A stretch of 37,943 nt of DNA from Octopus bimaculoides. Lineage: Eukaryota. Of the stretch, positions 3,248 through 37,018 are shown in pieces. The DNA is taken from positions 43,923,117-43,961,059 of the forward strand of contig NC_068983.1 of NCBI RefSeq assembly GCF_001194135.2. The letters are read 5' to 3'. Position 1 is the first letter of the stretch; every line of letters begins with the position of its first letter. The notes beneath the pieces were generated by a model. That model was not told the origin of the DNA, searched no databases, and saw only the letters and a program-made list of their open reading frames with translations. Made by a program: the position numbers and the translations under genes.

Positions 3248-3750
3248 ACTGGCACTTGTGCCAATGGAGCACTAAGAGCACTGTGTGGCTTCCGTGCCAG
3301 TGGCACGTAAATAGTACCATTTGAGTGTGATCGTTACCAGCATCGCCTTACTGGCACTTGTGCCGGTAGTACATCAAAAAACATTCAAGCGAGGTCATTG
3401 CCAGTGCCACTGGACAGGCTCCAATGCAGGTGGCACATAAAAAACACCATTTTGAGTGTGGCCGTTGCCAGTACCGCCTGACTGGCCTTCATGCCGGTGG
3501 CATGTAAAAGCACCCACTACACTCTCGGAGTGGTTGGCGTTAGGAAGGGCATCCAGCTGTAGAAACTCTGCCAAATCAGATTGGAGCCTGGTGTCGCCAC
3601 CTGGTCCNNNNNNNNNNGGGCATCCAGCTGTAGAAACTCTGCCAAATCAGATTGGAGCCTGGTGTCGCCACCTGGTCCACCAGTCCTCAGTCAAATCGTC
3701 TAACCCATGCTAGCATGGAAAGCGGACATTAAACGACGATGATGATGATG
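3248..3750 (+). mobile_element. RTE-LINE 3' UTR copy with internal tandem repeats and (GAT)n tail
   Basis: Tandem gtgcc[a/g]gtggca[c/t]gtaaa units, then cactctcggagtggttggcgttaggaagggcatccagctgtag core, ending gacattaaacgacgatgatgatg. Confidence 0.85.
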
Positions 3751-4829
3751 AGGAGGATTGATATTAGGTTATACCTTTGTATTCTCTTGTGCCACATCCT
3801 TAAAAACAACATCCAACATCTGTCGGGTGTTATTGTTGAACACCATAAAGACAGTGCCTACTTTTTTTCTGTCAGGATACAAAGAGAAACAGAGACCTAA
3901 TGAGTGAGAGGTGTCGATTATCAGAACCACGAGAGCTCTAAGCAGCAGACTGTTATTTTGATCTGGATTCTTGAGAGGAGGAATTTTCATTAATGTAACG
4001 CTGATATATCTAGCTTAGTGTCCTCATCATCAGGGTTTTTATTGTCATAGGAAACAATGGCATAGAGAATATTAGCACAGACTAAGGGCCAAGTATCGAG
4101 TGTAGTTGTTTATCTAGTGGGCGTCAGTTCAGTCCCTGGATCGGTCAAGCTACATAAATATATTATTATTATTTAAAACAGTTTGATCTGGTTCCATGCA
4201 ACTTAAAGTTTTGTCGATTTCATACAGAAACCTAGCTCATCCATGCTCAGATTACTTCATATATACATATGTATATATNNNNNNNNNNNNNNNNNNNNNN
4301 NNNNNNNNNNNNNNNNNNNNNNNNNNNNNNNNNNNNNNNNNNNNNNNNNNNNNNNNNNNNNNNNNNNNNNNNNNNNNNNNNNNNNNNNNNNNNNNNNNNN
4401 NNNNNNNNNNNNNNNNNNNNNNNNNNNNNNNNNNNNNNNNNNNNNNNNNNNNNNNNNNNNNNNNNNNNNNNNNNNNNNNNNNNNNNNNNNNNNNNNNNNN
4501 NNNNNNNNNNNNNNNNNNNNNNNNNNNNNNNNNNNNNNNNNNNNNNNNNNNNNNNNNNNNNNNNNNNNNNNNNNNNNNNNNNNNNNNNNNNNNNNNNNNN
4601 NNNNNNNNNNNNNNNNNNNNNNNNTATTAATTCAATTTAAAACCAAGTGGCCTAACATATAAAAAAATCTGAAAATTCAGAAAAAATTGTATTACATGTG
4701 TATAAGGGATGACCACTAGGTGGACATCTAATATGCTAAAAAGAGGTCATCAACGACCCAACCACAAAGAAAAATAATGTTCTCCAGAAAAATTTGTCCT
4801 GTTCTGGTGTTTTTGCGAAACCCTGATGT

Positions 4830-6584: not shown

Positions 6585-6890
6585 ATTCATCATCATCATC
6601 ATCGTTTAGTGTCTGCTTGCATGGTTTGACTGAGGACTGGCAAGCCAGGCAGCTGCACCAGGCTCCAATCTGATCTGACAATGTTTCTACAGCTGGATGC
6701 CCTACCTAACGCTAACCACTCTAAGAGTGTAGTGGGTGCTTTTTACATGCCACTCAGGCAGTACTGGCATCGACCACATTTGAATGATGCTTTTTATGTG
6801 TCACCGGCATGGGAGCTAGTCAGGTGGCACTGGCAACAACCACACTCGAATGGTGCCTTTTACGTGCCACCAGCATGGGAGTCAGTCATA
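6585..6890 (-). mobile_element. RTE-LINE 3' UTR copy
   Basis: (CAT)n tail, reverse-complement core, tandem units. Confidence 0.8.
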
Positions 6891-6934: not shown

Positions 6935-7490
6935 CATCATCGTTCAACATGTTTTCCATGCTGGCATGGGTTAGATGGTTTGACAGGAGCTGGCCAGACT
7001 CCAATTTGTCTGTTGTGATATGGTTTCTAAGGTGGGATGCTCTTCCTAATGCCAACCACTTTATAGAGTGAGCTGAGTGCTTTTTATGTGCCTCCATGCA
7101 GCACTGGACAAGTGCATATTACACGGCACCAGTGCAAGTGCATTTTACGTGGCACCAGTATCTGCAAAAGACATGCCTGTAAGTATGGATGACCATAATT
7201 TTACTTAGAATAACATGTCTTCTTAAGTACAGCAAATCGCCACAACTCCCAGTCCCTTCTCATTTTCTCAGTGAGGTTCAGCCTCTGAAAATCCTTCCTC
7301 ACCACTTTGTCCTGGGTCTAATCCTTTCACAGGTTCCCTCTACAATTAGACTTTGACACTTCTTTAACCAACTGTCCTCATCCATATGCATGACATGATC
7401 AAACCAGTATAGTCTTCTCTCTTGCACACAGCATCTGATGCCTCTTATACCTAGTTTTCCTCTTAAATCTTTTACACTGTCATGTATATA
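6935..7490 (-). mobile_element. 5'-truncated RTE-clade LINE: ORF2 C-terminus plus 3' UTR and (GAT)n tail
   Basis: Translation LRGKLGIRGIRCCVQERRLYWFDHVMHMDEDSWLKKCQSLIVEGTCERIRPRTKW resembles the RTE ORF2 RLRW-GHV-RM...RGRP..TW motif; contiguous with the family 3' UTR. Confidence 0.8.
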
Positions 7491-7499
7491 TGGCTGTTG

Positions 7500-7686
7500 T
7501 GTCAGTGTCACGTAAAAAGCACCCACTACACTCTTGGAGTGGTTGGCGTTAGGAAAGGCATCCAGCTGTAGAAATATTGCCAGATCAGATTGGAATCTGG
7601 TGCAGCAGCTGGCTCTCCAGACCTCAGTCAAACCGTCCAGCCCATACCAGCATGAAAAACAGACACTAAACGATGATGATGATGAT
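7500..7686 (+). mobile_element. RTE-LINE 3' end
   Basis: Family core and (GAT)n tail. Confidence 0.85.
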
Positions 7687-9062: not shown

Positions 9063-9269
9063 TGTTTATCTTGATATGAGGTCACCATGTCGCGCACATA
9101 TGGTTGTGATGCATGTGGCTGGTGTACCCTTATCAGACGGGTAGTCATGATGGGTNNNNNNNNNNATGGTTGTGATGCATGTGGCTGGTGTACCCTTATC
9201 AGACGGGTAGTCATGATGGGTATATTGGGCTTTGTATATTTGTACCCCAGTGTCACTTTGAGTATTATC

Positions 9270-10607: not shown

Positions 10608-11545
10608 NNNNNNNNNNNNNNNNNNNNNNNNNNNNNNNNNNNNNNNNNNNNNNNNNNNNNNNNNNNNNNNNNNNNNNNNNNNNNNNNNNNNNNNNNNNNN
10701 NNNNNNNNNNNNNNNNNNNNNNNNNNNNNNNNNNNNNNNNNNNNNNNNNNNNNNNNNNNNNNNNNNNNNNNNNNNNNNNNNNNNNNNNNNNNNNNNNNNN
10801 NNNNNNNNNNNNNNNNNNNNNNNNNNNNNNNNNNNNNNNNNNNNNNNNNNNNNNNNNNNNNNNNNNNNNNNNNNNNNNNNNNNNNNNNNNNNNNNNNNNN
10901 NNNNNNNNNNNNNNNNNNNNNNNNNNNNNNNNNNNNNNNNNNNNNNNNNNNNNNNNNNNNNNNNNNNNNNNNNNNNNNNNNNNNNNNNNNNNNNNNNNNN
11001 NNNNNNNNNNNNNNNNNNNNNNNNNNNNNNNNNNNNNNNNNNNNNNNNNNNNNNNNNNNNNNNNNNNNNNNNNNNNNNNNNNNNNNNNNNNNNNNNNNNN
11101 NNNNNNNNNNNNNNNNNNNNNNNNNNNNNNNNNNNNNNNNNNNNNNNNNNNNNNNNNNNNNNNNNNNNNNNNNNNNNNNNNNNNNNNNNNNNNNNNNNNN
11201 NNNNNNNNNNNNNNNNNNNNNNNNNNNNNNNNNNNNNNNNNNNNNNNNNNNNNNNNNNNNNNNNNNNNNNNNNNNNNNNNNNNNNNNNNNNNNNNNNNNN
11301 NNNNNNNNNNNNNNNNNNNNNNNNNNNNNNNNNNNNNNNNNNNNNNNNNNNNNNNNNNNNNNNNNNNNNNNNNNNNNNNNNNNNNNNNNNNNNNNNNNNN
11401 NNNNNNNNNNNNNNNNNNNNNNNNNNNNNNNNNNNNNNNNNNNNNNNNNNNNNNNNNNNNNNNNNNNNNNNNNNNNNNNNNNNNNNNNNNNNNNNNNNNN
11501 NNNNNNNNNNNNNNNNNNNNNNNNNNNNNNNNNNNNNNNNNNNNN
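10608..11545. other. Largest assembly gap (others: 4279-4624, 19163-19490, 35131-35767, 36354-36738; 10-N gaps at 3608, 9156, 22679, 24256, 28204)
   Basis: Runs of N. Confidence 1.
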
Positions 11546-13873: not shown

Positions 13874-15882
13874 TTATAAGATTCTTTCCATATAAATGGC
13901 AAAATATAATGTGCCTTTCTTATCTGAATATCCAGTAATTAGTCTTGGGAAAAAACTGTCCTTCAAGTACCCGTCGGCAATGATATCTTCAAGCTGCGAC
14001 ATCTCAACATTACTTTTGAATGTGCCTTGTCTGGAAAGGTCTTTCCTGAAAATGACTGAAAATCTTGGTCTTTTATACTTGCTGGAAGTGTCCAAGTATG
14101 TCATAACACGGTGTGCCTTAGCATTTGAGACAACACTCTCAGTCAGTTCCTTCAGGGAAATATCTATGTATTCTTTGTAGTCTTTCACAGGTTTCTTTTC
14201 CAAAATGAAACACACTTGTGGTTCTTGATCAATGTGGACAAAACTCTGGACTCTTGGAACAAAACCCTTCTCATTATAAACTTGAGCAAACAATTTGTAA
14301 CATTGAGAATATTGTCGAATTCCAAATCGAATATCAACAGGTTCCTCTTTCACCGTATCAAATAGTGCCACATATCTGTTTTTGTCTGTGTGTGAGAAAC
14401 TGATATAACTCTGTAATAAAGACAGATATACATTTTTCTTGGAATAAATATGTTTGAAGTGGAGTAAACTCTTCTCATCAAGCCCATGCTCCAGATAGTA
14501 AGAACTAAGGCTTTCATCTGGGTTTACTTTAGAGATAACAGAAAAATAAGATTCTCTATTATACTCAAAAGCATTTATCCATTCAATTTTGAAGTATTGG
14601 TCTTTAATAGCATTGACATATGCTGAAATATGGTGTTCAGACAACTTGTATTTAATAATTTGTTCGTTAACTCCTACGTGCCCTACCCGAACATCGGCCA
14701 AATCATAAGAGAAGTAATTAGCACCATTTTGTGACCAATCTGTGAAATAATTCATGAAGTTTCGAATTGGTAATGGTTTATTGTGACCACCAACTAATAG
14801 CATAACAAATGTCTCTGAAGACATATATGAGGAATTACCTGGATTCTGAACTGTTTGTAAGAAGTTCCGGTGGCACAACAGCATACCATCAATTATGCCA
14901 TCTCCTTCCAGACAAACTTGACCATTTTTGTTCACATTTAGGTTAGCACCAACCCATAAGCCTGTAGCTTTCATTTTTCTTGGTTTTGCCAAGAGATTTT
15001 TGATGGAAGATTTTTTAAGTAACTGATGTGTACCAGTATGATCCAAGCATCGAAAAAAGCGCATAATATCATAAACATTGGTATACCAGCCATCAGTGAG
15101 AGAGACCACCTCCCTCTCTAGGTGTAGAGAATAAGTTGTATTAAAGTTTCCGACCAAGCTACGTTTAACCATATTCTTTATCCTGTTTTCTTTCATATGT
15201 TTTCCAAATCTTGTATGCCACATTCCACAAGGTTCCAAAATATTTTTCCTTACAAATGTTGGATAATCATAATTTTGAACTTTCTCAATAATTTGGTCCA
15301 GAATTACATAACCAAGATGAGAATGAACTGATTTTGTCCCTGGTTTAAAATTCAGTGGAATCGACATCATATATCTGAAAATATCCTTCAGTTCAGCAGT
15401 GTTCTTTAACTGCATGATGGAAGTGATGTTTGGAATGCGATAACCATTCTTTAAGTAAATAGAATTCAGAACTGGATCAAACATTGGTGGCATAGCTGAA
15501 TCCCAGCCACCAGCATGCCGAAGAAGGTCATCGACTGTAATGTCATACAGCCTGTTGTCAGTTCGAAAAATGCTCCAAGGTCGTAAGTGATTCAAAATTC
15601 CAAACTTACCAAAGACTTTAGCGGTAAGGTTCACTTTACCATTTTCAACAAGTTTAAGAACAGATACAGCAGTGAGCAATTTAGAAATATTTGAAGCTGG
15701 AAACAAGACTTCTGGTGTCATTTTAACATTATTCTGTGTACTGCCATAGCCATGGGTGTATAAAAGTTTTCCTTGGCGCATCAAAGCAACAGATGCACCT
15801 CGATATTGGAATTGCTTTAAAAATTTCTGGAAAGATTTGTCAAAACCTGCATTGTTCTCAAGACTTGGTCTTCCTTTGATTC
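13874..15882 (-). CDS. Terminal coding exon of a beta-lactamase/transpeptidase-fold (S12/PF00144-like) protein with five C-terminal BTRD1/polyglycine-hydrolase-like repeats; probably catalytically degenerate; 5' exon(s) not located
   Basis: 636-aa ORF in the track. It extends in frame 98 nt upstream (IKGRPSLENNAGFDKSFQKFLKQFQYRGASVAL) to a polypyrimidine+AG acceptor (ttttctccttag|GA ATC). Fold landmarks: GASVALMRQGKLLYTHGYG, LFPASNISKLLTAVSVLKLVENGKV, ITVDDLLRHAGGWD, PLNFKPGTKSVHSHLGY, ILEPCGM, GWYTNVYDIMRF. C-terminal repeats such as EHGLDEKSL...LQSY...RYVALF. Confidence 0.9.
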
Positions 15883-15900
15883 CTAAGGAGAAAATGAAAC
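15883..15900 (-). other. 3' splice acceptor (phase-1 intron) of the lactamase-like gene
   Basis: Minus strand reads gtttcattttctccttag|GA; AG at 15884-15883; AT-rich intron-like sequence upstream. Confidence 0.8.
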
Positions 15901-17134
15901 AAAAATATATTGATTAGAATAACAATATTTTGATTAAATTTTATAAATTAAAACCTAAAGAATTGTTATAAATTCAGAACATGCTAGTTGGAAATATAGT
16001 GACTATACATTTAAAAGTTTGTTGGTTTAACTACACAATGGAATTGTTGAAAACAGTACATGTACATCCAAAAAATGAATAACATTAAACGCACACATAT
16101 ACATAAGAAATTAAATAAATGACAAGGGAAGAAGGAATTATGTCATGAACTTCGTTGGCTTACAGCTGTTTCTGCTACAAAATGCAATGCACTCATAGTT
16201 GAGTACTTGTGTATCACCCTATAGCTTCAATGGAGCTTTAGACACTTTGTTCTGAAGCATATGTATATTGAGTTCTAACACCAGGTTATTGGTAATCACC
16301 ATGCCTAAGCAAAATAATATATAATATATAGAAAACGAAGAGTTCAAACAAAACAAAATCAATTTATTTGCATAATAGTCAATTTCATAACACCTACACA
16401 CGTTTGAATATCTATATTCATATTTTACAATTAAAAATTGTGTTATGAATTTAGAAGTCTGTAGCGAACACTACATCTATTAGGATGTAAATGAATATGT
16501 CAATTTTTGCCCTGAAGAGATTTTTACCTTCTAAATTCATAATGCAATTTTTAATTGTAAAATATGAATGAAGGTGGATATTGAAACACATGCAGGCATT
16601 ATGAAATTGACTATTATGTAAATAAATTGATTTTGCTGGGTTTAAACTCTCCATTTTCTTTAAATTATATTACCAAAATTCTGTTGTTATATCGTATGGA
16701 TGCAAACATTTATAAATTAATCGATATAGAAATAAACCAGTGGACACTTGGATGTAAGACATCCTTAGAAAGATTGATTTCTTTCTATACAAAACTTTAT
16801 AAATATATTTACACACACATACCAATGTTCAATATCATCTTCATCATTTTAAGGTCTATTTTTCCATGCTTGTAAGGGTTAAACAGATTTTACTGTAGTA
16901 GATTTTCTGTGGTCAGATGCATGCCATCCTGTTGCCAATTCTTACCTGTTTCCAAGTAGGGTAATATTTTCCCATGCCTCAACACATATTAAGCAAATAT
17001 TGGAAATGAAAGACACTACTTGTATGACACTGACACTCATTTACAACTATTATGCAATGTCAAGACAGGAGTGGACAAACAAAACACACACACACACACA
17101 CACACGTATGTGTGTCTCTTTCTATTTTTTAATT

Positions 17135-17560
17135 ATTATAAATCTTCCACTGAGAAGGGAGCTGGTTTCCAACAAAGATACAAGGCTCCATCTTTGAGAT
17201 GTAGTTAACACAGACAAATTCACATTTGGAACTTGAGAAAAGTCTTGCATATTTTTACTGTTCCACTCACAGATTGGACTTGTACAAACCAGCTGGTCGA
17301 TTTCTCTTTCTGAAAATCCCAGTTCATCCAGAGTCTCCTTTAAGCATTTGCTAACAAAACCTACTACTCCAATTATTATTGATATGAATATGAATTCATA
17401 GTCTGGATATAGAAGCTGGAGGTTTTGAAGCAGTTGTCCATAGCTATCCTCTTTTTCTTTGATTTTCAAAGAGATATTTATATCTGCAGGGCAGCTGACC
17501 TCTATGATGGTACATACCTTTGCCCCTCTGTCCCAAACAACAATATCTGGCCTGTTATGA
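17135..17560 (-). mobile_element. RLE-type LINE 3' fragment (second subfamily)
   Basis: HNRPDIVVWDRGAKVCTIIEVSCPADINISLKIKEKEDSYGQLLQNLQLLYPDYEFIFISIIIGVVGFVSKCLKETL; PD...E...K endonuclease motif. Confidence 0.8.
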
Positions 17561-18462: not shown

Positions 18463-18790
18463 TATCATCATCATCGTCGTTGTTTAACGTCTGCTTTCCA
18501 TTTTCCATGCTGGCATAGGTTGGACAGTTTGACTGAGGACTGGCAAGCCAGTAGGCTGCACCAGGCTCCAATCTGATCTGGCAAGGTTTCTAGAGCTGGA
18601 TACCCTTCCTAATGCCAACCACTCTGAGAGTGTAGTGGGTGCTTTTTACATGCCACCGGAACAGGAGCCAGTCAGGCAGCACTGGCACTGGCCACACTCA
18701 AATGGTGCTCTGTATGTGCCAGTCATGTGGTACGGGCATTGACCATGCTCGAATGGTGCTTTTTACATGCCAGTCAGGCAGCACTGGCAT
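18463..18790 (-). mobile_element. RTE-LINE 3' UTR copy
   Basis: (CAT)n tail, core, tandem units. Confidence 0.85.
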
Positions 18791-19162: not shown

Positions 19163-19490
19163 NNNNNNNNNNNNNNNNNNNNNNNNNNNNNNNNNNNNNN
19201 NNNNNNNNNNNNNNNNNNNNNNNNNNNNNNNNNNNNNNNNNNNNNNNNNNNNNNNNNNNNNNNNNNNNNNNNNNNNNNNNNNNNNNNNNNNNNNNNNNNN
19301 NNNNNNNNNNNNNNNNNNNNNNNNNNNNNNNNNNNNNNNNNNNNNNNNNNNNNNNNNNNNNNNNNNNNNNNNNNNNNNNNNNNNNNNNNNNNNNNNNNNN
19401 NNNNNNNNNNNNNNNNNNNNNNNNNNNNNNNNNNNNNNNNNNNNNNNNNNNNNNNNNNNNNNNNNNNNNNNNNNNNNNNNNNNNNNNNNN

Positions 19491-22250: not shown

Positions 22251-22786
22251 TGATGCCCATAAAAAATAAGGTGGGGGGCTGCTAATTTGTTGAGACCTTG
22301 ACAAATATTTTGAAGATTAACTCAGAAAACCATTGAAAACAGCTAAACAAGGAGTAAAGATAATCTCCTTAGGAATGTCACTAATCTCACCGCCACCCCC
22401 ACTCCTTCTCCTTCGTCCACATTCCACACATTATACAATATCATTCCTGAGAAGAAAGTCTCCCAGTGGCACCTGTATGATGGACTTACACACACATATA
22501 CTGACATGTATACATAAAAATATAGCCATAAATATGCACACACACGCATACACACACACATATATATATATGTACATGCATATGTGTATGCATGTATGTA
22601 AGTATACATATACATATATATCTTTTGCATACATACAACATGTCTGTGTCTACATATATATATATATATATATATATANNNNNNNNNNCCATAAATATGC
22701 ACACACACGCATACACACACACATATATATATACAAGCACAGACATGCACATGCGTGTGCACACACACATACACACAGATATATTG

Positions 22787-24255: not shown

Positions 24256-24999
24256 NNNNNNNNNNTTTTTTTTTTTTTTCTTTCCAGAAATGTTGACATC
24301 GGATGGTAAATAATTGAATAAATGGAATATAAATCTGTCGAGTTCAAAGTCTCTATCCCTTTTAAATATACAAATATATATATACACACACTTTCTTAAT
24401 TGAAAATGAAACCTGAAACTGAGAGTTTGTCAAGCAACTTGAGCTTCATGCCACTGTGATCTTCAGGTGAGAACAGTGGTATGAAACTAGAGTTGTGAGA
24501 CAAACTCTGTTTCAGTTTCAATGAAAAGAAACCCATATCAACAATATCCCTTGAGCACTCTTCTCTCATTCATCCAACATAAACCAACATACACACACAC
24601 ACACACACATGTATGTGTGTGTATATAGACATGCAAACACACACATACACACACACACAAAATGTGTGTATTTTTGTTGATAAAACCCTGCACAAGGGTG
24701 AAAAAAATTGAGTAATAAATCAGTGTTGAACAAAAGAATCTTGTAATTAATCCAACTCAAGCACGCCCTTGTTATTGGATCCATTGGCAAAGCAGAAAAC
24801 CATTGCTCAATTTATGAGAAACATGAAACCAATGATGCCATTCTAAATTTAAATTCATGAAATGAAATAAAAAAAAAAAGAAGATAAAATTATTTTGTCT
24901 CAATGATAAATAAAATCTTGTCCATCACTTGCAATTGAGAATGACATTGTATACAGTGACATGCTTTCATTAAGTGTGTTTGAAGCATGTAATAATAAT

Positions 25000-28112: not shown

Positions 28113-28440
28113 TAGGAGTGGCTGTGCGGTAAGTAGCTTGCTTACGAACCACATGGTTCTGGGTTCAGTCCCACTGCGTGGCACCTTGGGCAAGTGTCTT
28201 CAANNNNNNNNNNGTTCAGTCCCACTGCGTGGCACCTTGGGCAAGTGTCTTCAACTATAGCCTCGGGCCGACCAAAGCGTTGTGAGTGGATTTGGTAGAC
28301 GGAAACTCAATGATACATGTGTACATGTGTGTGTTTGTGTCCACCCTTGTCTTGACATCACGTAATGGTTGTAAACAAGCATCACCGTCATACAAGTGGT
28401 GTTTGTTCCCAGTCTTCCATGAAGAACATGCCTGGTCACA
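28113..28440 (+). mobile_element. SINE family A head joined to the alternative ((GAT)n-family) tail module
   Basis: ggagtggctgtgcggtaag head, then cttgtcttgacatcacgtaatggttgtaaac...catgcctggtca instead of the usual tail. Confidence 0.7.
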
Positions 28441-35130: not shown

Positions 35131-36330
35131 NNNNNNNNNNNNNNNNNNNNNNNNNNNNNNNNNNNNNNNNNNNNNNNNNNNNNNNNNNNNNNNNNNNNNN
35201 NNNNNNNNNNNNNNNNNNNNNNNNNNNNNNNNNNNNNNNNNNNNNNNNNNNNNNNNNNNNNNNNNNNNNNNNNNNNNNNNNNNNNNNNNNNNNNNNNNNN
35301 NNNNNNNNNNNNNNNNNNNNNNNNNNNNNNNNNNNNNNNNNNNNNNNNNNNNNNNNNNNNNNNNNNNNNNNNNNNNNNNNNNNNNNNNNNNNNNNNNNNN
35401 NNNNNNNNNNNNNNNNNNNNNNNNNNNNNNNNNNNNNNNNNNNNNNNNNNNNNNNNNNNNNNNNNNNNNNNNNNNNNNNNNNNNNNNNNNNNNNNNNNNN
35501 NNNNNNNNNNNNNNNNNNNNNNNNNNNNNNNNNNNNNNNNNNNNNNNNNNNNNNNNNNNNNNNNNNNNNNNNNNNNNNNNNNNNNNNNNNNNNNNNNNNN
35601 NNNNNNNNNNNNNNNNNNNNNNNNNNNNNNNNNNNNNNNNNNNNNNNNNNNNNNNNNNNNNNNNNNNNNNNNNNNNNNNNNNNNNNNNNNNNNNNNNNNN
35701 NNNNNNNNNNNNNNNNNNNNNNNNNNNNNNNNNNNNNNNNNNNNNNNNNNNNNNNNNNNNNNNNNNNCCCTTCCATCTCTACTCCCACCAAGAGATTTCT
35801 ATCTGAAATAAAACATCGTAACATTAACCCAATGAAAATTGGGTTAATACCTTCGTAAATGTTTGTGGGGAAAACAACTGAAACCAGACGTGTTTTAGTT
35901 TGCAACAGCAACAACGACAAAGACAGCAACAACCATAACAACAGCAAAAACAAGTGCTGACAACAGTAGAAAGGCTATAAATATGTGTGCGTGTCTGTTT
36001 ATGGTTATGTGTGTGTGTGTGTGTGTGTAAGTGTGTGAAGATTGTATATGTCGGTATGTATATATAAATTGGAATACTCGAGTGTGCGTGTGTGTGTGAA
36101 TATGTGTACGAAACGTTTTGAGTATATGCGTGAGCGAGAGAGGGAGGGAGAGAGAGAAAGAGAGAAACAGTGAGTGTATTGTGTGTATGTTTGTGTTTAT
36201 GTCTATCTGGATGAGGGTGTTTGTGTATAAATTTGTATGCGTTAATGTGTGAAAATGTTTTCATGCGATTGAATGTGTGTGTAACTATATATGTGAATAT
36301 GTGTGTGAAAGTTTGTATGTATGTATGTGT

Positions 36331-37018
36331 GGAGGCGCAATGGCCCAGTGGTTNNNNNNNNNNNNNNNNNNNNNNNNNNNNNNNNNNNNNNNNNNNNNNN
36401 NNNNNNNNNNNNNNNNNNNNNNNNNNNNNNNNNNNNNNNNNNNNNNNNNNNNNNNNNNNNNNNNNNNNNNNNNNNNNNNNNNNNNNNNNNNNNNNNNNNN
36501 NNNNNNNNNNNNNNNNNNNNNNNNNNNNNNNNNNNNNNNNNNNNNNNNNNNNNNNNNNNNNNNNNNNNNNNNNNNNNNNNNNNNNNNNNNNNNNNNNNNN
36601 NNNNNNNNNNNNNNNNNNNNNNNNNNNNNNNNNNNNNNNNNNNNNNNNNNNNNNNNNNNNNNNNNNNNNNNNNNNNNNNNNNNNNNNNNNNNNNNNNNNN
36701 NNNNNNNNNNNNNNNNNNNNNNNNNNNNNNNNNNNNNNCTAAGGCTTCACGAGACTCAGGCAGGGGATGGTGGCGACCCTTGCTGTACTCTTCCACCACA
36801 ACTTTCTCTCACTCTTACTTCCTGTTTCTGTTGTGCCTGTATTTCAAAGGGTCAGCCTTGTCACACTGTGTCACGCTGAATCTCCTCGAGAACTACGTTA
36901 AGGGTACACGTGTCTGTGGAGTGCTCATCCACTTGCACATTAATTTCACGAGCAGGCTGTTCCGTTGATCGGATCAACTGGAACCCTCGACGTCGTAAGC
37001 GACGGAGTGCCAACAACA
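36331..37018 (+). mobile_element. SINE family D spanning an assembly gap
   Basis: ggaggcgcaatggcccagtggtt head before the gap; body and tail after it match 19540-19830. Confidence 0.75.

What the first reader, a model, noticed from the sequence alone, without database searches (positions are those of the whole stretch)
14903..15694. All three catalytic motifs are replaced: an intact-ORF pseudoenzyme
Seen: FPASNISK aligns to the family pattern F-x-I-A-S-x-S-K with Asn (15691-15689) at the nucleophile Ser position, a Ser one residue earlier and Lys kept. PGTKSVHSHLGY has HSH (15325-15317) in place of YxN. VCLEG (LEG at 14911-14903) sits where H[ST]G is expected. Known: SxxK, YxN and H/K[ST]G form the active site of class C lactamases and DD-peptidases. 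Inference: serine hydrolysis lost while ~2 kb stays free of stops, implying selection for a binding, decoy or scaffold role; the two His could alternatively create new (for example metal-binding) chemistry.
Basis: partly seen in the sequence, partly recalled or inferred. Interest (0 to 1): 0.8.

Follow-up and report, generated by a model that had tools for sequence, protein, structure and literature searches.

The report
Catalytically dead beta-lactamase-fold octopus protein
An octopus gene encodes a secreted protein built like a bacterial or fungal serine peptidase but lacking the residues that do the chemistry, yet evolution has kept it intact, so it most likely binds something rather than cutting it.

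Summary
Window 15882..13874 (minus strand) is the single large coding exon of Octopus bimaculoides LOC106876528. It encodes a serine-beta-lactamase/S12-peptidase-fold domain followed by a five-repeat alpha/beta barrel of the kind seen in fungal polyglycine hydrolases (PDB 7tpu).

The nucleophile Ser is Asn85 (15691-15689). Tyr-x-Asn is His207-Ser-His209 (15325-15317). Leu345-Glu-Gly347 (14911-14903) sits at the beta3 K/H-x-G position by profile-profile alignment.

The gene is not decaying. The Argonauta ortholog carries the same substitutions. dN/dS is about 0.10 in both domains, and dN (0.115) is no higher than in the catalytically intact-looking paralog (0.126).

The case is not unique. The protein belongs to an uncharacterised family of marine invertebrates, from molluscs to amphioxus. 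Only 15 of 59 sampled members keep Ser-Lys-Tyr-Asn, against 121 of 128 bacterial relatives. Motif 3 is absent from the whole family and from the active fungal enzyme, so its loss says nothing about activity.

Best reading: a conserved pseudoenzyme acting as a non-catalytic extracellular binding or scaffold protein. The ligand is unknown. Moderately interesting: a new dead variant of a known fold and architecture.

The parts
13874..15882 (-). Terminal coding exon of LOC106876528 (residues 21/22-689 plus stop at 13876-13874). It encodes the whole mature protein.
   Evidence: 100% tblastn match to P0001 residues 21-689. The frame is open from 15883 to 13874. The Argonauta ortholog has the same exon boundary.
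15883..15884 (-). Splice acceptor AG after a polypyrimidine tract (…TTTCTCCTTAG|GAATC…), phase-1 intron. Exon 1 (signal peptide MDPLRKLSFWIVTLLTLGLS) is not in the window.
   Evidence: Sequence context. The exon-1 peptide was searched in six frames and not found. The Argonauta gene spans 38.7 kb, with the same TTAG|GAATC acceptor about 36.7 kb into it.
14699..15844 (-). Serine beta-lactamase / S12 peptidase-fold domain (about residues 34-415).
   Evidence: Pfam PF00144, E=1.4e-33. AlphaFold model pLDDT 82.8. Foldseek hits to 2qmi, 9sn1, 4gdn, family VIII esterase, ClbP, LACTB, AmpC and R61, E 1e-16 to 1e-12. Best PDB profile hit is 7tpu, E=2.9e-31.
15680..15694 (-). Motif 1 position: Ser84-Asn85-Ile86-Ser87-Lys88. 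Asn85 replaces the nucleophile Ser. Lys is kept. Asn85-Ile-Ser is also an N-glycosylation sequon.
15317..15325 (-). Motif 2 position: His207-Ser208-His209 in place of Tyr-x-Asn.
14903..14911 (-). Motif 3 position on the predicted beta3 strand: Leu345-Glu346-Gly347 in place of K/H-[ST]-G (register good to about one residue).
   Evidence: hhalign of family against bacterial relatives. Strand order in the model, E343-346, E353-359, E377-385. Codons.
14864..14872 (-). His358-Arg359-Asn360. His358 is invariant in all 32 aligned animal homologs. It is probably the end of beta4, aligning with a conserved bacterial Arg. MAFFT treats it as the motif-3 candidate instead.
   Evidence: Bacterial P0082 reads 'GTSTLLVHRNDG'.
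13877..14662 (-). C-terminal five-repeat (strand-helix-strand-strand) alpha/beta barrel, polyglycine-hydrolase-like (about residues 428-689).
   Evidence: The domain-only model has pLDDT 88.6 and five EHEE repeats. Its only significant PDB match is 7tpu_A, E=2.1e-5, TM 0.67. Pfam PF17660 'Polyglycine hydrolase-like, structural repeat' matches 24 of 32 homologs. The repeat scheme matches the description in PMC9912923.

Best explanation
The feature is the main exon of a real, expressed-type gene for a secreted, probably N-glycosylated two-domain protein. The N-terminal domain has the serine beta-lactamase / S12 D-peptidase fold. The C-terminal domain is a five-repeat barrel of the fungal polyglycine-hydrolase type.

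Shown:
- The acyl-enzyme machinery is gone. The nucleophile Ser is Asn85, the general-base Tyr is His207, Asn is His209, and there is no K/H-x-G on beta3.
- The protein has nevertheless been held under strong purifying selection in both domains since at least the Octopus-Argonauta split.
- Catalytic-residue loss is recurrent across its bilaterian family.

Inferred: it is a pseudoenzyme that works without forming an acyl-enzyme. Most likely it uses the retained cleft to hold a ligand rather than cleave it. Lys88, Ser87 and the conserved motif-1 helix and motif-2 loop are all still in place. By analogy with enzymatic relatives that act on D-amino-acid, glycine-rich or peptidoglycan-type peptides, the ligand may be such a peptide.

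The barrel would supply protein-protein contacts. The setting is extracellular, as in recognition, decoy or matrix roles. This would be comparable to amidase-dead PGRPs, glucanase-dead GNBPs and chitinase-like lectins.
For: - Identity and fold.
- Catalytic substitutions, from independent alignments.
- The same substitutions in the Argonauta ortholog, with dN/dS 0.096 overall, 0.10 in the lactamase domain and 0.09 in the barrel.
- dN is not raised relative to the Ser/Tyr-Ser-Asn paralog pair (0.115 against 0.126).
- Asn-Ile-Ser and His207 are kept in all five Asn-type cephalopod sequences.
- A close Asn/His-Ser-Ser relative (P0003) occurs as an uninterrupted full-length ORF on roughly 3 kb contigs, indexed in 76 assembly blocks. 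This is consistent with spliced mRNA.
- Ser and Tyr are lost together. Only 15 of 59 family members are intact, against 121 of 128 bacterial relatives.
- The C-terminal barrel matches the 7tpu N-domain.
- The signal-peptide-like N-terminus of the annotated protein and five N-x-S/T sequons.
Against: - No biochemical data exist. No ligand is known for any family member, and no paper mentions the gene.
- Ser84 and Ser87 flank the lost nucleophile and are nearly invariant. I could not inspect model coordinates to exclude a shifted nucleophile.
- dS is about 1.2, close to saturation, so the exact omega is rough. pN/pS of 0.18 is robust.
- No transcript evidence for this exact octopus protein was found in the collection (one genomic contig only).
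- The conserved motif segments are also core structural elements, so their conservation does not prove a working binding cleft.
Confidence: 0.7

Rival explanations
1. It is still a hydrolase with rebuilt chemistry. Either a neighbouring Ser (Ser84 or Ser87) acts as nucleophile with Lys88, or His207 and His209 (possibly with His358) form a His-based or metal-dependent catalytic centre in the old pocket.
For: Ser84, Ser87 and Lys88 are nearly invariant and His358 is invariant in the animal family. His at the Tyr position has arisen in several lineages, often together with Asp or Glu at the nucleophile position. Strong constraint on the lactamase domain is also what an enzyme would show.
Against: Ser87 and Lys88 are equally conserved in ordinary active relatives, so they are not a compensating novelty. 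Other dead lineages have Leu at position -1 ('PILGMSK', 'PVLDMSK'). The second His (209) is confined to Octopus and Argonauta, and close relatives have His-Ser-Ser. By the preferred alignment His358 lies on beta4, not beta3. Ser and Tyr are lost together family-wide.
Confidence: 0.12
2. The lactamase-fold domain is only an inert scaffold or folding partner. All function sits in the C-terminal polyglycine-hydrolase-type barrel, for example protein-protein interaction or matrix assembly.
For: The barrel occurs on its own or with other partners in all kingdoms. It was proposed as a protein-interaction module (PMC9912923) and is found in a red-algal cuticle protein. The barrel is the best-predicted part of the model.
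Against: The lactamase domain is as constrained as the barrel (omega 0.10 against 0.09). Its cleft-lining segments, including the new Asn85 and His207, are invariant among Asn-type cephalopod sequences. A mere scaffold would be expected to tolerate more change there.
Confidence: 0.12
3. A-to-I RNA editing, which is pervasive in coleoid cephalopods, recodes Asn85 (AAU) to Ser (AIU read as AGU). This would restore the nucleophile in some transcripts and make a conditionally active enzyme.
For: The codon is AAT, one editable A away from Ser. Codons 69-89 show unusually high synonymous conservation between Octopus and Argonauta, with a 29-nt identical run and 14 of 15 identical codons against 63% overall. 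That pattern is known around cephalopod editing sites (own knowledge).
Against: There is no stable local RNA structure around the site (MFE z = +1.3) and no complementarity with the other conserved segment. Editing cannot turn His (CAU) back into Tyr, so the general base stays missing. Other dead lineages use Gly, Ala, Asp or Glu codons, which editing cannot rescue.
Confidence: 0.03
4. It is a recently inactivated pseudogene drifting neutrally that happens still to have an open frame.
For: All catalytic motifs are altered. No exact-match transcript contig was found for the octopus protein.
Against: The 670-codon open frame is kept in two genera, with dS about 1.2 but dN 0.115. The active-site substitutions are identical in both. 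Related Asn-type genes are transcribed.
Confidence: 0.01

Closest known systems
Fungal polyglycine hydrolases (chitinase-modifying proteins Fvan-cmp, Es-cmp, Bz-cmp; PDB 7tpu)
   Same: The same two building blocks: a PF00144 beta-lactamase-fold domain and the five-repeat EHEE barrel (PF17660). 7tpu is the best PDB hit for the family profile (E=2.9e-31) and the only significant structural match of the C-terminal domain (E=2.1e-5, TM 0.67). Both are secreted. Both lack the K-T-G motif.
   Different: The domain order is reversed: barrel first in the fungal enzymes, barrel last here. The fungal enzymes keep Ser343, Lys346, Tyr447 and Asn449 and cleave Gly-Gly bonds. The octopus protein has Asn, Lys, His and His.
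Bacterial S12 / 'CubicO' D-stereospecific peptidases, class C beta-lactamases and R61 DD-peptidase (e.g. 4y7p, 9sn1 Lip3 DL-peptidase, 2qmi, AmpC, 3pte)
   Same: The fold (Foldseek E 1e-16 to 1e-12). Up to 34% identity over the domain to bacterial proteins, one from Thermomicrobiales and the rest from unnamed metagenome contigs. Conserved structural motifs (LLxHxxGW, GGWxSxxDxxRF).
   Different: 121 of 128 sampled bacterial relatives keep Ser-Lys-Tyr-Asn and nearly all have H/K-x-G. The octopus protein keeps only Lys. No bacterial relative with the lactamase-then-barrel order was identified among the hits inspected.
LACTB (mitochondrial serine beta-lactamase-like protease of animals)
   Same: An animal protein of the same fold.
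   Different: From own knowledge, LACTB is an active, filament-forming mitochondrial protease with an intact catalytic Ser. It has no barrel domain and is only distantly related (E about 1e-7 by phmmer).
[quoted passage not shown]
   Same: A secreted mollusc protein with a beta-lactamase-type domain and unknown function. Authors have suggested it is an inactivated lactamase relative (PMC5854119; PMC5824581).
   Different: The relationship was not tested here, because no sequence was at hand. NCBI labels the bivalve members of the present family 'uncharacterized' rather than gigasin-6-like, so it is probably a different branch of PF00144.
Catalytically dead recognition proteins of invertebrate immunity and matrix (non-amidase PGRPs, GNBP/beta-GRP, chitinase-like lectins)
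   Same: Functional analogy only, from own knowledge: enzyme folds that lost catalytic residues but stay under selection as secreted binding proteins, alongside active paralogs. Here the Ser/Tyr-Ser-Asn paralogs P0008 and P0009 play that part.
   Different: Unrelated folds. No binding data exist for the octopus protein.

Membership tests
Serine beta-lactamase-like / S12 peptidase superfamily (Pfam PF00144) | Sequence and fold match to the family | tested here: met
   PF00144 E=1.4e-33. Foldseek probability 1.00 to many members. hhalign to AmpC, probability 97.5.
Serine beta-lactamase-like / S12 peptidase superfamily (Pfam PF00144) | Nucleophile Ser in S-x-x-K at the start of helix 2 | tested here: not met
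   Asn85 aligns with the nucleophile Ser of 2qmi, 4gdn, 7tpu and AmpC. Lys88 is kept.
Serine beta-lactamase-like / S12 peptidase superfamily (Pfam PF00144) | Tyr-x-Asn (general base and substrate-positioning Asn) | tested here: not met
   His207-Ser-His209 aligns with Tyr447-Ser-Asn449 of 7tpu and Tyr150-Ala-Asn152 of AmpC.
Serine beta-lactamase-like / S12 peptidase superfamily (Pfam PF00144) | K/H-[ST]-G on strand beta3 | tested here: not met
   Leu345-Glu-Gly347 by hhalign, or His358-Arg-Asn360 by MAFFT. Neither is canonical. The motif is also absent from the whole animal family and from the active fungal enzyme, so it is not diagnostic in this branch.
Polyglycine-hydrolase-like two-domain proteins (PF00144 + PF17660) | Five-repeat EHEE alpha/beta barrel | tested here: met
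   The model has five EHEE repeats. Foldseek to 7tpu_A gives E=2.1e-5, TM 0.67. PF17660 matches 24 of 32 homologs. The octopus sequence itself gives no PF17660 hit at E up to 10, and the HMM of the domain does not reach 7tpu.
Polyglycine-hydrolase-like two-domain proteins (PF00144 + PF17660) | Domain order: barrel N-terminal, lactamase domain C-terminal | tested here: not met
   The order is reversed in the octopus protein and in the whole animal family.
Polyglycine-hydrolase-like two-domain proteins (PF00144 + PF17660) | Serine endopeptidase activity on Gly-Gly linkers | not testable with these tools
   The catalytic Ser and Tyr are absent, so activity is not expected. This needs an assay.
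Pseudoenzyme (operational definition) | Homolog of an enzyme lacking residues essential for its chemistry | tested here: met
Pseudoenzyme (operational definition) | Maintained by purifying selection (not a pseudogene) | tested here: met
   dN/dS 0.096. pN/pS 0.18 (0.146-0.215). dN is equal to or lower than that of the intact paralog.
Pseudoenzyme (operational definition) | Expressed as protein and devoid of the ancestral activity | not testable with these tools
   Only indirect evidence: an Asn-type relative is found on transcript-like contigs in many sequencing runs.

The most novel reading that the evidence does not exclude
In octopods the abandoned serine-peptidase pocket has been rebuilt into a new functional centre. 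His207 and His209, possibly with invariant His358 and with Asn85 and Lys88 nearby, would form a metal-binding or His-based catalytic or sensing site. That would make this a neo-enzyme or metal-dependent receptor on a beta-lactamase fold, not merely a dead binder. A variant of this reading: Asn85, which sits in a conserved Asn-Ile-Ser sequon, carries a glycan that fills the old active site.
Probability: 0.07. Interest if true: 0.75.

Novelty: new variant of a known kind. Interest (0 to 1): 0.42.

Why it matters
The finding ties an anonymous octopus gene to a bilaterian-wide family of secreted proteins that nobody has studied. The family is found in molluscs, brachiopods, nemerteans, echinoderms, hemichordates and amphioxus. 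It combines a penicillin-binding-protein-type domain with the enigmatic barrel of fungal polyglycine hydrolases.

Most sampled members have discarded the catalytic Ser and Tyr yet remain tightly conserved. Cephalopods keep both 'live-looking' and 'dead' paralogs, which is a natural experiment for studying how a serine-hydrolase fold is turned into a non-catalytic protein.

If the ligand is a bacterial or matrix peptide, the family could be an unrecognised class of invertebrate recognition or matrix proteins. It would also give the polyglycine-hydrolase barrel a second, animal context in which its function can be studied.

Tried and rejected
- **Motif 3 at His358-Arg-Asn360.** MAFFT gave this placement. 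I rejected it in favour of Leu345-Glu-Gly347 after the profile-profile alignment, the strand count in the model and the bacterial 'LLVHRNDG' beta4 end.
- **Exon 1 in the window.** I searched for the signal-peptide exon by tblastn and by six-frame peptide search. It is absent.
- **C-terminal domain by sequence.** The domain's HMM against PDB gave nothing significant. Pfam on the octopus C-terminus alone gave no PF17660 hit. The question was settled by homologs and by structure.
- **RNA-editing rescue of Asn85.** There is no local RNA structure and no pairing between the two segments with conserved synonymous sites.
- **One or two Ser-to-Asn losses in cephalopods.** Neighbour-joining bootstraps leave this unresolved. 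Monophyly of the Asn-type sequences gets 47% and cephalopod monophyly gets 100%.
- **Paralogs in the window.** None were found. The Argonauta A and B paralogs lie on different scaffolds.
- **Literature.** There is nothing on the gene identifiers and no paper among those listed uses 'BTRD1'. Cephalopod plus beta-lactamase searches were irrelevant.
- **Other scans.** tRNA and Rfam scans of the window were empty. Pfam found nothing on three ORFs I suspected might be transposon remnants.
- **Model coordinates.** I could not obtain them, so I made no residue-level superposition or His-His distance measurement.
Full report
**What is at the locus.** The window is from Octopus bimaculoides. The open frame on the minus strand translates to residues 21-689 of the annotated protein LOC106876528 (P0001, 689 aa) at 100% identity.
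- The frame is open from 15883 to the stop at 13876-13874. It begins just after a polypyrimidine tract and an AG acceptor (…TTTCTCCTTAG|GAATC…). The coding exon is therefore 15882..13874, with a phase-1 intron.
- The signal-peptide exon (MDPLRKLSFWIVTLLTLGLS) is not in the window.
- In Argonauta hians the orthologous gene spans 38.7 kb, with the same TTAG|GAATC acceptor about 36.7 kb into it.
- This is the only long real ORF in the window. The other 'long ORFs' run through assembly gaps.

**Checking the observation.** Asn85 AAT is at 15691-15689, flanked by Ser84, with Ser87 and Lys88 following. His207-Ser208-His209 lies at 15325-15317. Leu345-Glu346-Gly347 lies at 14911-14903.
- Pairwise HMMER alignments to solved structures put Asn85 opposite the nucleophile Ser of 2qmi, 4gdn and 7tpu. 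They put His207 and His209 opposite the Tyr and Asn of motif 2.
- The published residue roles for 7tpu are Ser343, Lys346, Tyr447 and Asn449 (PMC9912923).
- A profile alignment to E. coli AmpC agrees.

**The register of motif 3.** This needed more work. MAFFT aligned the bacterial K/H-x-G with His358-Arg359-Asn360, and that His is invariant in all 32 animal homologs.
- A global profile-profile alignment of 54 family members against 106 bacterial relatives aligns Leu345-Glu-Gly347 with the bacterial 'WW-H-x-G'. It aligns His358 with the conserved Arg that ends beta4 (probability 98.6).
- The AlphaFold model shows the canonical succession of strands: 329-338, then 343-346, 353-359 and 377-385.
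- Bacterial relatives end beta4 with 'LLVHRNDG', which closely resembles 'LLCHRN'.

Under either register the canonical motif is missing.

**What the protein is.** The N-terminal roughly 380 residues are a PF00144 domain (E=1.4e-33).
- The full-length model (pLDDT 82.8, pTM 0.86) matches penicillin-binding-protein relatives, family VIII esterases, ClbP, LACTB, AmpC and the R61 DD-peptidase.
- The best PDB hit for the family profile is the lactamase domain of the fungal polyglycine hydrolase Fvan-cmp, 7tpu (E=2.9e-31).
- The C-terminal roughly 260 residues fold into five strand-helix-strand-strand repeats. Modelled alone (pLDDT 88.6), this domain has a single significant PDB match, again 7tpu (E=2.1e-5, TM 0.67 over 265 columns).
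- The 7tpu N-domain is described as five EHEE repeats forming a barrel of unknown function (PMC9912923).
- Pfam PF17660, now titled 'Polyglycine hydrolase-like, structural repeat', matches 24 of 32 homologs, though not the octopus sequence itself.

So this is a polyglycine-hydrolase-like two-domain protein with the domain order reversed.

**Is it decaying?** No.
- The Argonauta ortholog (78% identity) has the same exon and the same Asn-Ile-Ser-Lys, His-Ser-His and Leu-Glu-Gly.
- Nei-Gojobori estimates are dN 0.115, dS 1.20 and omega 0.096. pN/pS is 0.18 with a bootstrap range of 0.146-0.215. The values are practically the same for the lactamase domain (0.10) and the barrel (0.09).
- dS is near saturation, so omega is approximate, but the direction is unambiguous.
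- Cephalopods also carry a paralog that keeps Ser, Tyr-Ser-Asn (P0008 in Argonauta, P0009 in O. vulgaris). Over the comparable Octopus-Argonauta distance its dN is 0.126. The 'dead' copy is therefore at least as constrained as the 'live-looking' one.
- Three further cephalopod-clade sequences (P0003-P0005, species unidentified) have Asn at the nucleophile position and His-Ser-Ser. One of them also has Lys replaced by Asn.
- P0003 occurs as an uninterrupted 700-codon ORF on roughly 3 kb contigs. The index lists it in 76 assembly blocks, of which 24 were read. Two of the six contigs shown are fused to an intron-less SNF-transporter ORF. These are spliced transcripts, so Asn-type genes are expressed.

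**Family context.** A search of 1.84 billion representative proteins with the family profile found roughly 30-45 representatives at 50% identity with the full lactamase-then-barrel architecture.
- Named members come from many marine invertebrates and are all 'uncharacterized':
  - bivalves (Ostrea, Solemya, Mactra, Mya, Mercenaria, Dreissena)
  - abalones
  - a nemertean (Lineus)
  - a brachiopod (Lingula)
  - a sea urchin and a sea cucumber
  - a hemichordate (Glandiceps)
  - amphioxus
- At the nucleophile position the sampled family has Ser 26, Gly 21, Asn 5, Asp 5, Ala 3, Glu 2 and Gln 1.
- Ser co-occurs with Tyr. Loss of Ser goes with loss of Tyr in 36 of 37 cases.
- All four of Ser, Lys, Tyr and Asn are intact in 15 of 59 family sequences, against 121 of 128 bacterial relatives. 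The family sample is redundant for bivalves.
- The beta3 K/H-x-G is missing from the entire lactamase-then-barrel family (consensus W-Q-E-N-D or W-V-G-E-E). It is also missing from the active fungal enzyme, so its absence is ancestral and uninformative.
- A more distant Argonauta paralog (P0093) and the Lingula protein keep Ser, Tyr-Ser/Cys-Asn and His-Thr-Gly.
- Neighbour-joining trees make cephalopods monophyletic (100%). They cannot resolve whether the octopod and the other Asn-type sequences share one Ser-to-Asn event (47% support).

**How it most likely works.**
- Shown: the fold, the architecture, the missing catalytic residues, purifying selection and recurrent loss in the family.
- Inferred: canonical acylation is impossible without the Ser nucleophile and the Tyr general base. 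The protein is therefore a pseudoenzyme whose selected function is non-catalytic.
- Several features point to an extracellular binding, decoy or scaffold role in which the old cleft holds a ligand and the barrel makes protein contacts. There is a secretory leader and five N-x-S/T sequons. Lys88, Ser87 and the invariant motif-1 helix and motif-2 loop are retained within the Asn-type group. Constraint is equal on both domains. 'Live-looking' paralogs coexist with the dead copy.
- Enzymatic relatives act on D-amino-acid peptides, lipopeptides, peptidoglycan-type peptides or polyglycine linkers. That gives a first guess at the ligand class, but it is only an analogy.

**Rivals.**
- *A shifted nucleophile (Ser84 or Ser87) or a His- or metal-based centre* cannot be excluded without coordinates or assays. 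It is disfavoured because Ser87 and Lys88 are ordinary family features. Other dead lineages have Leu before the lost Ser. The second His is confined to Octopus and Argonauta. His358 probably lies on beta4.
- *A scaffold-only lactamase domain* is disfavoured by its equal constraint.
- *A-to-I editing of AAU to Ser* is chemically possible, and the surrounding codons 69-89 are unusually conserved at synonymous sites. However, there is no supporting RNA structure, and editing cannot restore Tyr.
- *Neutral decay* is refuted.

**Novelty and literature.**
- No paper in the library mentions the gene or its named orthologs.
- The only animal beta-lactamase-domain proteins discussed in mollusc literature are shell-matrix proteins such as gigasin-6. 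Its function is unknown and authors have suggested it may be inactive. Its relationship to this family was not tested.
- The polyglycine-hydrolase barrel has been noted in predicted proteins 'across all kingdoms' and in a red-algal cuticle protein, without any assigned function.

The octopus protein is therefore a new, catalytically dead, domain-swapped variant of a known fold combination. It represents an unstudied animal family rather than a singular oddity. I score interest as moderate.

Noticed in passing
window 15617-15679 and 15163-15234 region (codons 69-89 and 217-240 of the gene, minus strand): These are the two stretches with the highest synonymous-site conservation between Octopus and Argonauta. 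They contain identical runs of 29 nt and 39 nt, and 14 of 15 identical codons against 63% overall. They lie at motif 1 and just after motif 2. No RNA structure or mutual complementarity was found.
   Followed up: partly
window 15683-15691 (minus strand), Asn85-Ile86-Ser87: The residue that replaced the nucleophile creates an N-x-S glycosylation sequon. The sequon is invariant in all five Asn-type cephalopod sequences. A glycan in the former active site is conceivable.
   Followed up: no
related proteins P0070-P0075, P0077, P0078, P0080, P0081, P0089 (unnamed metagenome/SRA sequences): Another branch of the family has Asp, Glu or Gly at the nucleophile position, Leu before it, and often His at the Tyr position (for example LDMSK … HSN). 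This is a different and recurrent way of rebuilding the pocket.
   Followed up: partly
P0093 (Argonauta hians, 'LOC115210556') and P0094 (Lingula anatina LOC106172838): A more distant animal branch keeps Ser, Tyr-Ser/Cys-Asn and a canonical His-Thr-Gly. It has a C-terminal repeat region and lacks an obvious signal peptide in P0093. Cephalopods thus have at least three paralog types.
   Followed up: partly
L008 523-2445 and L009 315-2237: Transcript-like contigs carrying the Asn-type relative P0003 are joined tail-to-tail to an intron-less 640-aa SNF-family transporter ORF. This is probably an assembly chimera or overlapping 3' ends of neighbouring genes.
   Followed up: no
window 3295-3509, 6749-6888, 18667-18790: Copies of a roughly 51-67 nt unit (GCCAGTCAGGYGGCACTGGCA…CCACACTCRAATG…) occur as short tandem arrays at three places, one in the opposite orientation. 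It looks like an interspersed repeat family.
   Followed up: no
window 7299-7631 (-) and 17122-17469 (-): Two short ORFs have tails that reminded me of non-LTR retrotransposon proteins (…RRLYWFDHVMHMDEDSW…; …IIGVVGFVSKCLKETLDELGF…). Pfam gave no hit, so this stays a recollection only.
   Followed up: partly
window 3608-3617, 4279-4624, 9156-9165, 10608-11545, 19163-19490, 22679-22688, 24256-24265, 28204-28213, 35131-35767, 36354-36738: Ten assembly gaps (runs of N) are flanked by AT-rich or microsatellite sequence. They generate spurious long 'ORFs' in mechanical ORF lists. The window holds no tRNA or Rfam match.
   Followed up: yes
alignments A1 and /scratch all.aln against hhalign: MAFFT and profile-profile alignment disagree by one beta-strand on where the K/H-x-G motif falls. 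An invariant His attracts the MAFFT alignment. This is a caution for automated active-site calls in this family.
   Followed up: yes
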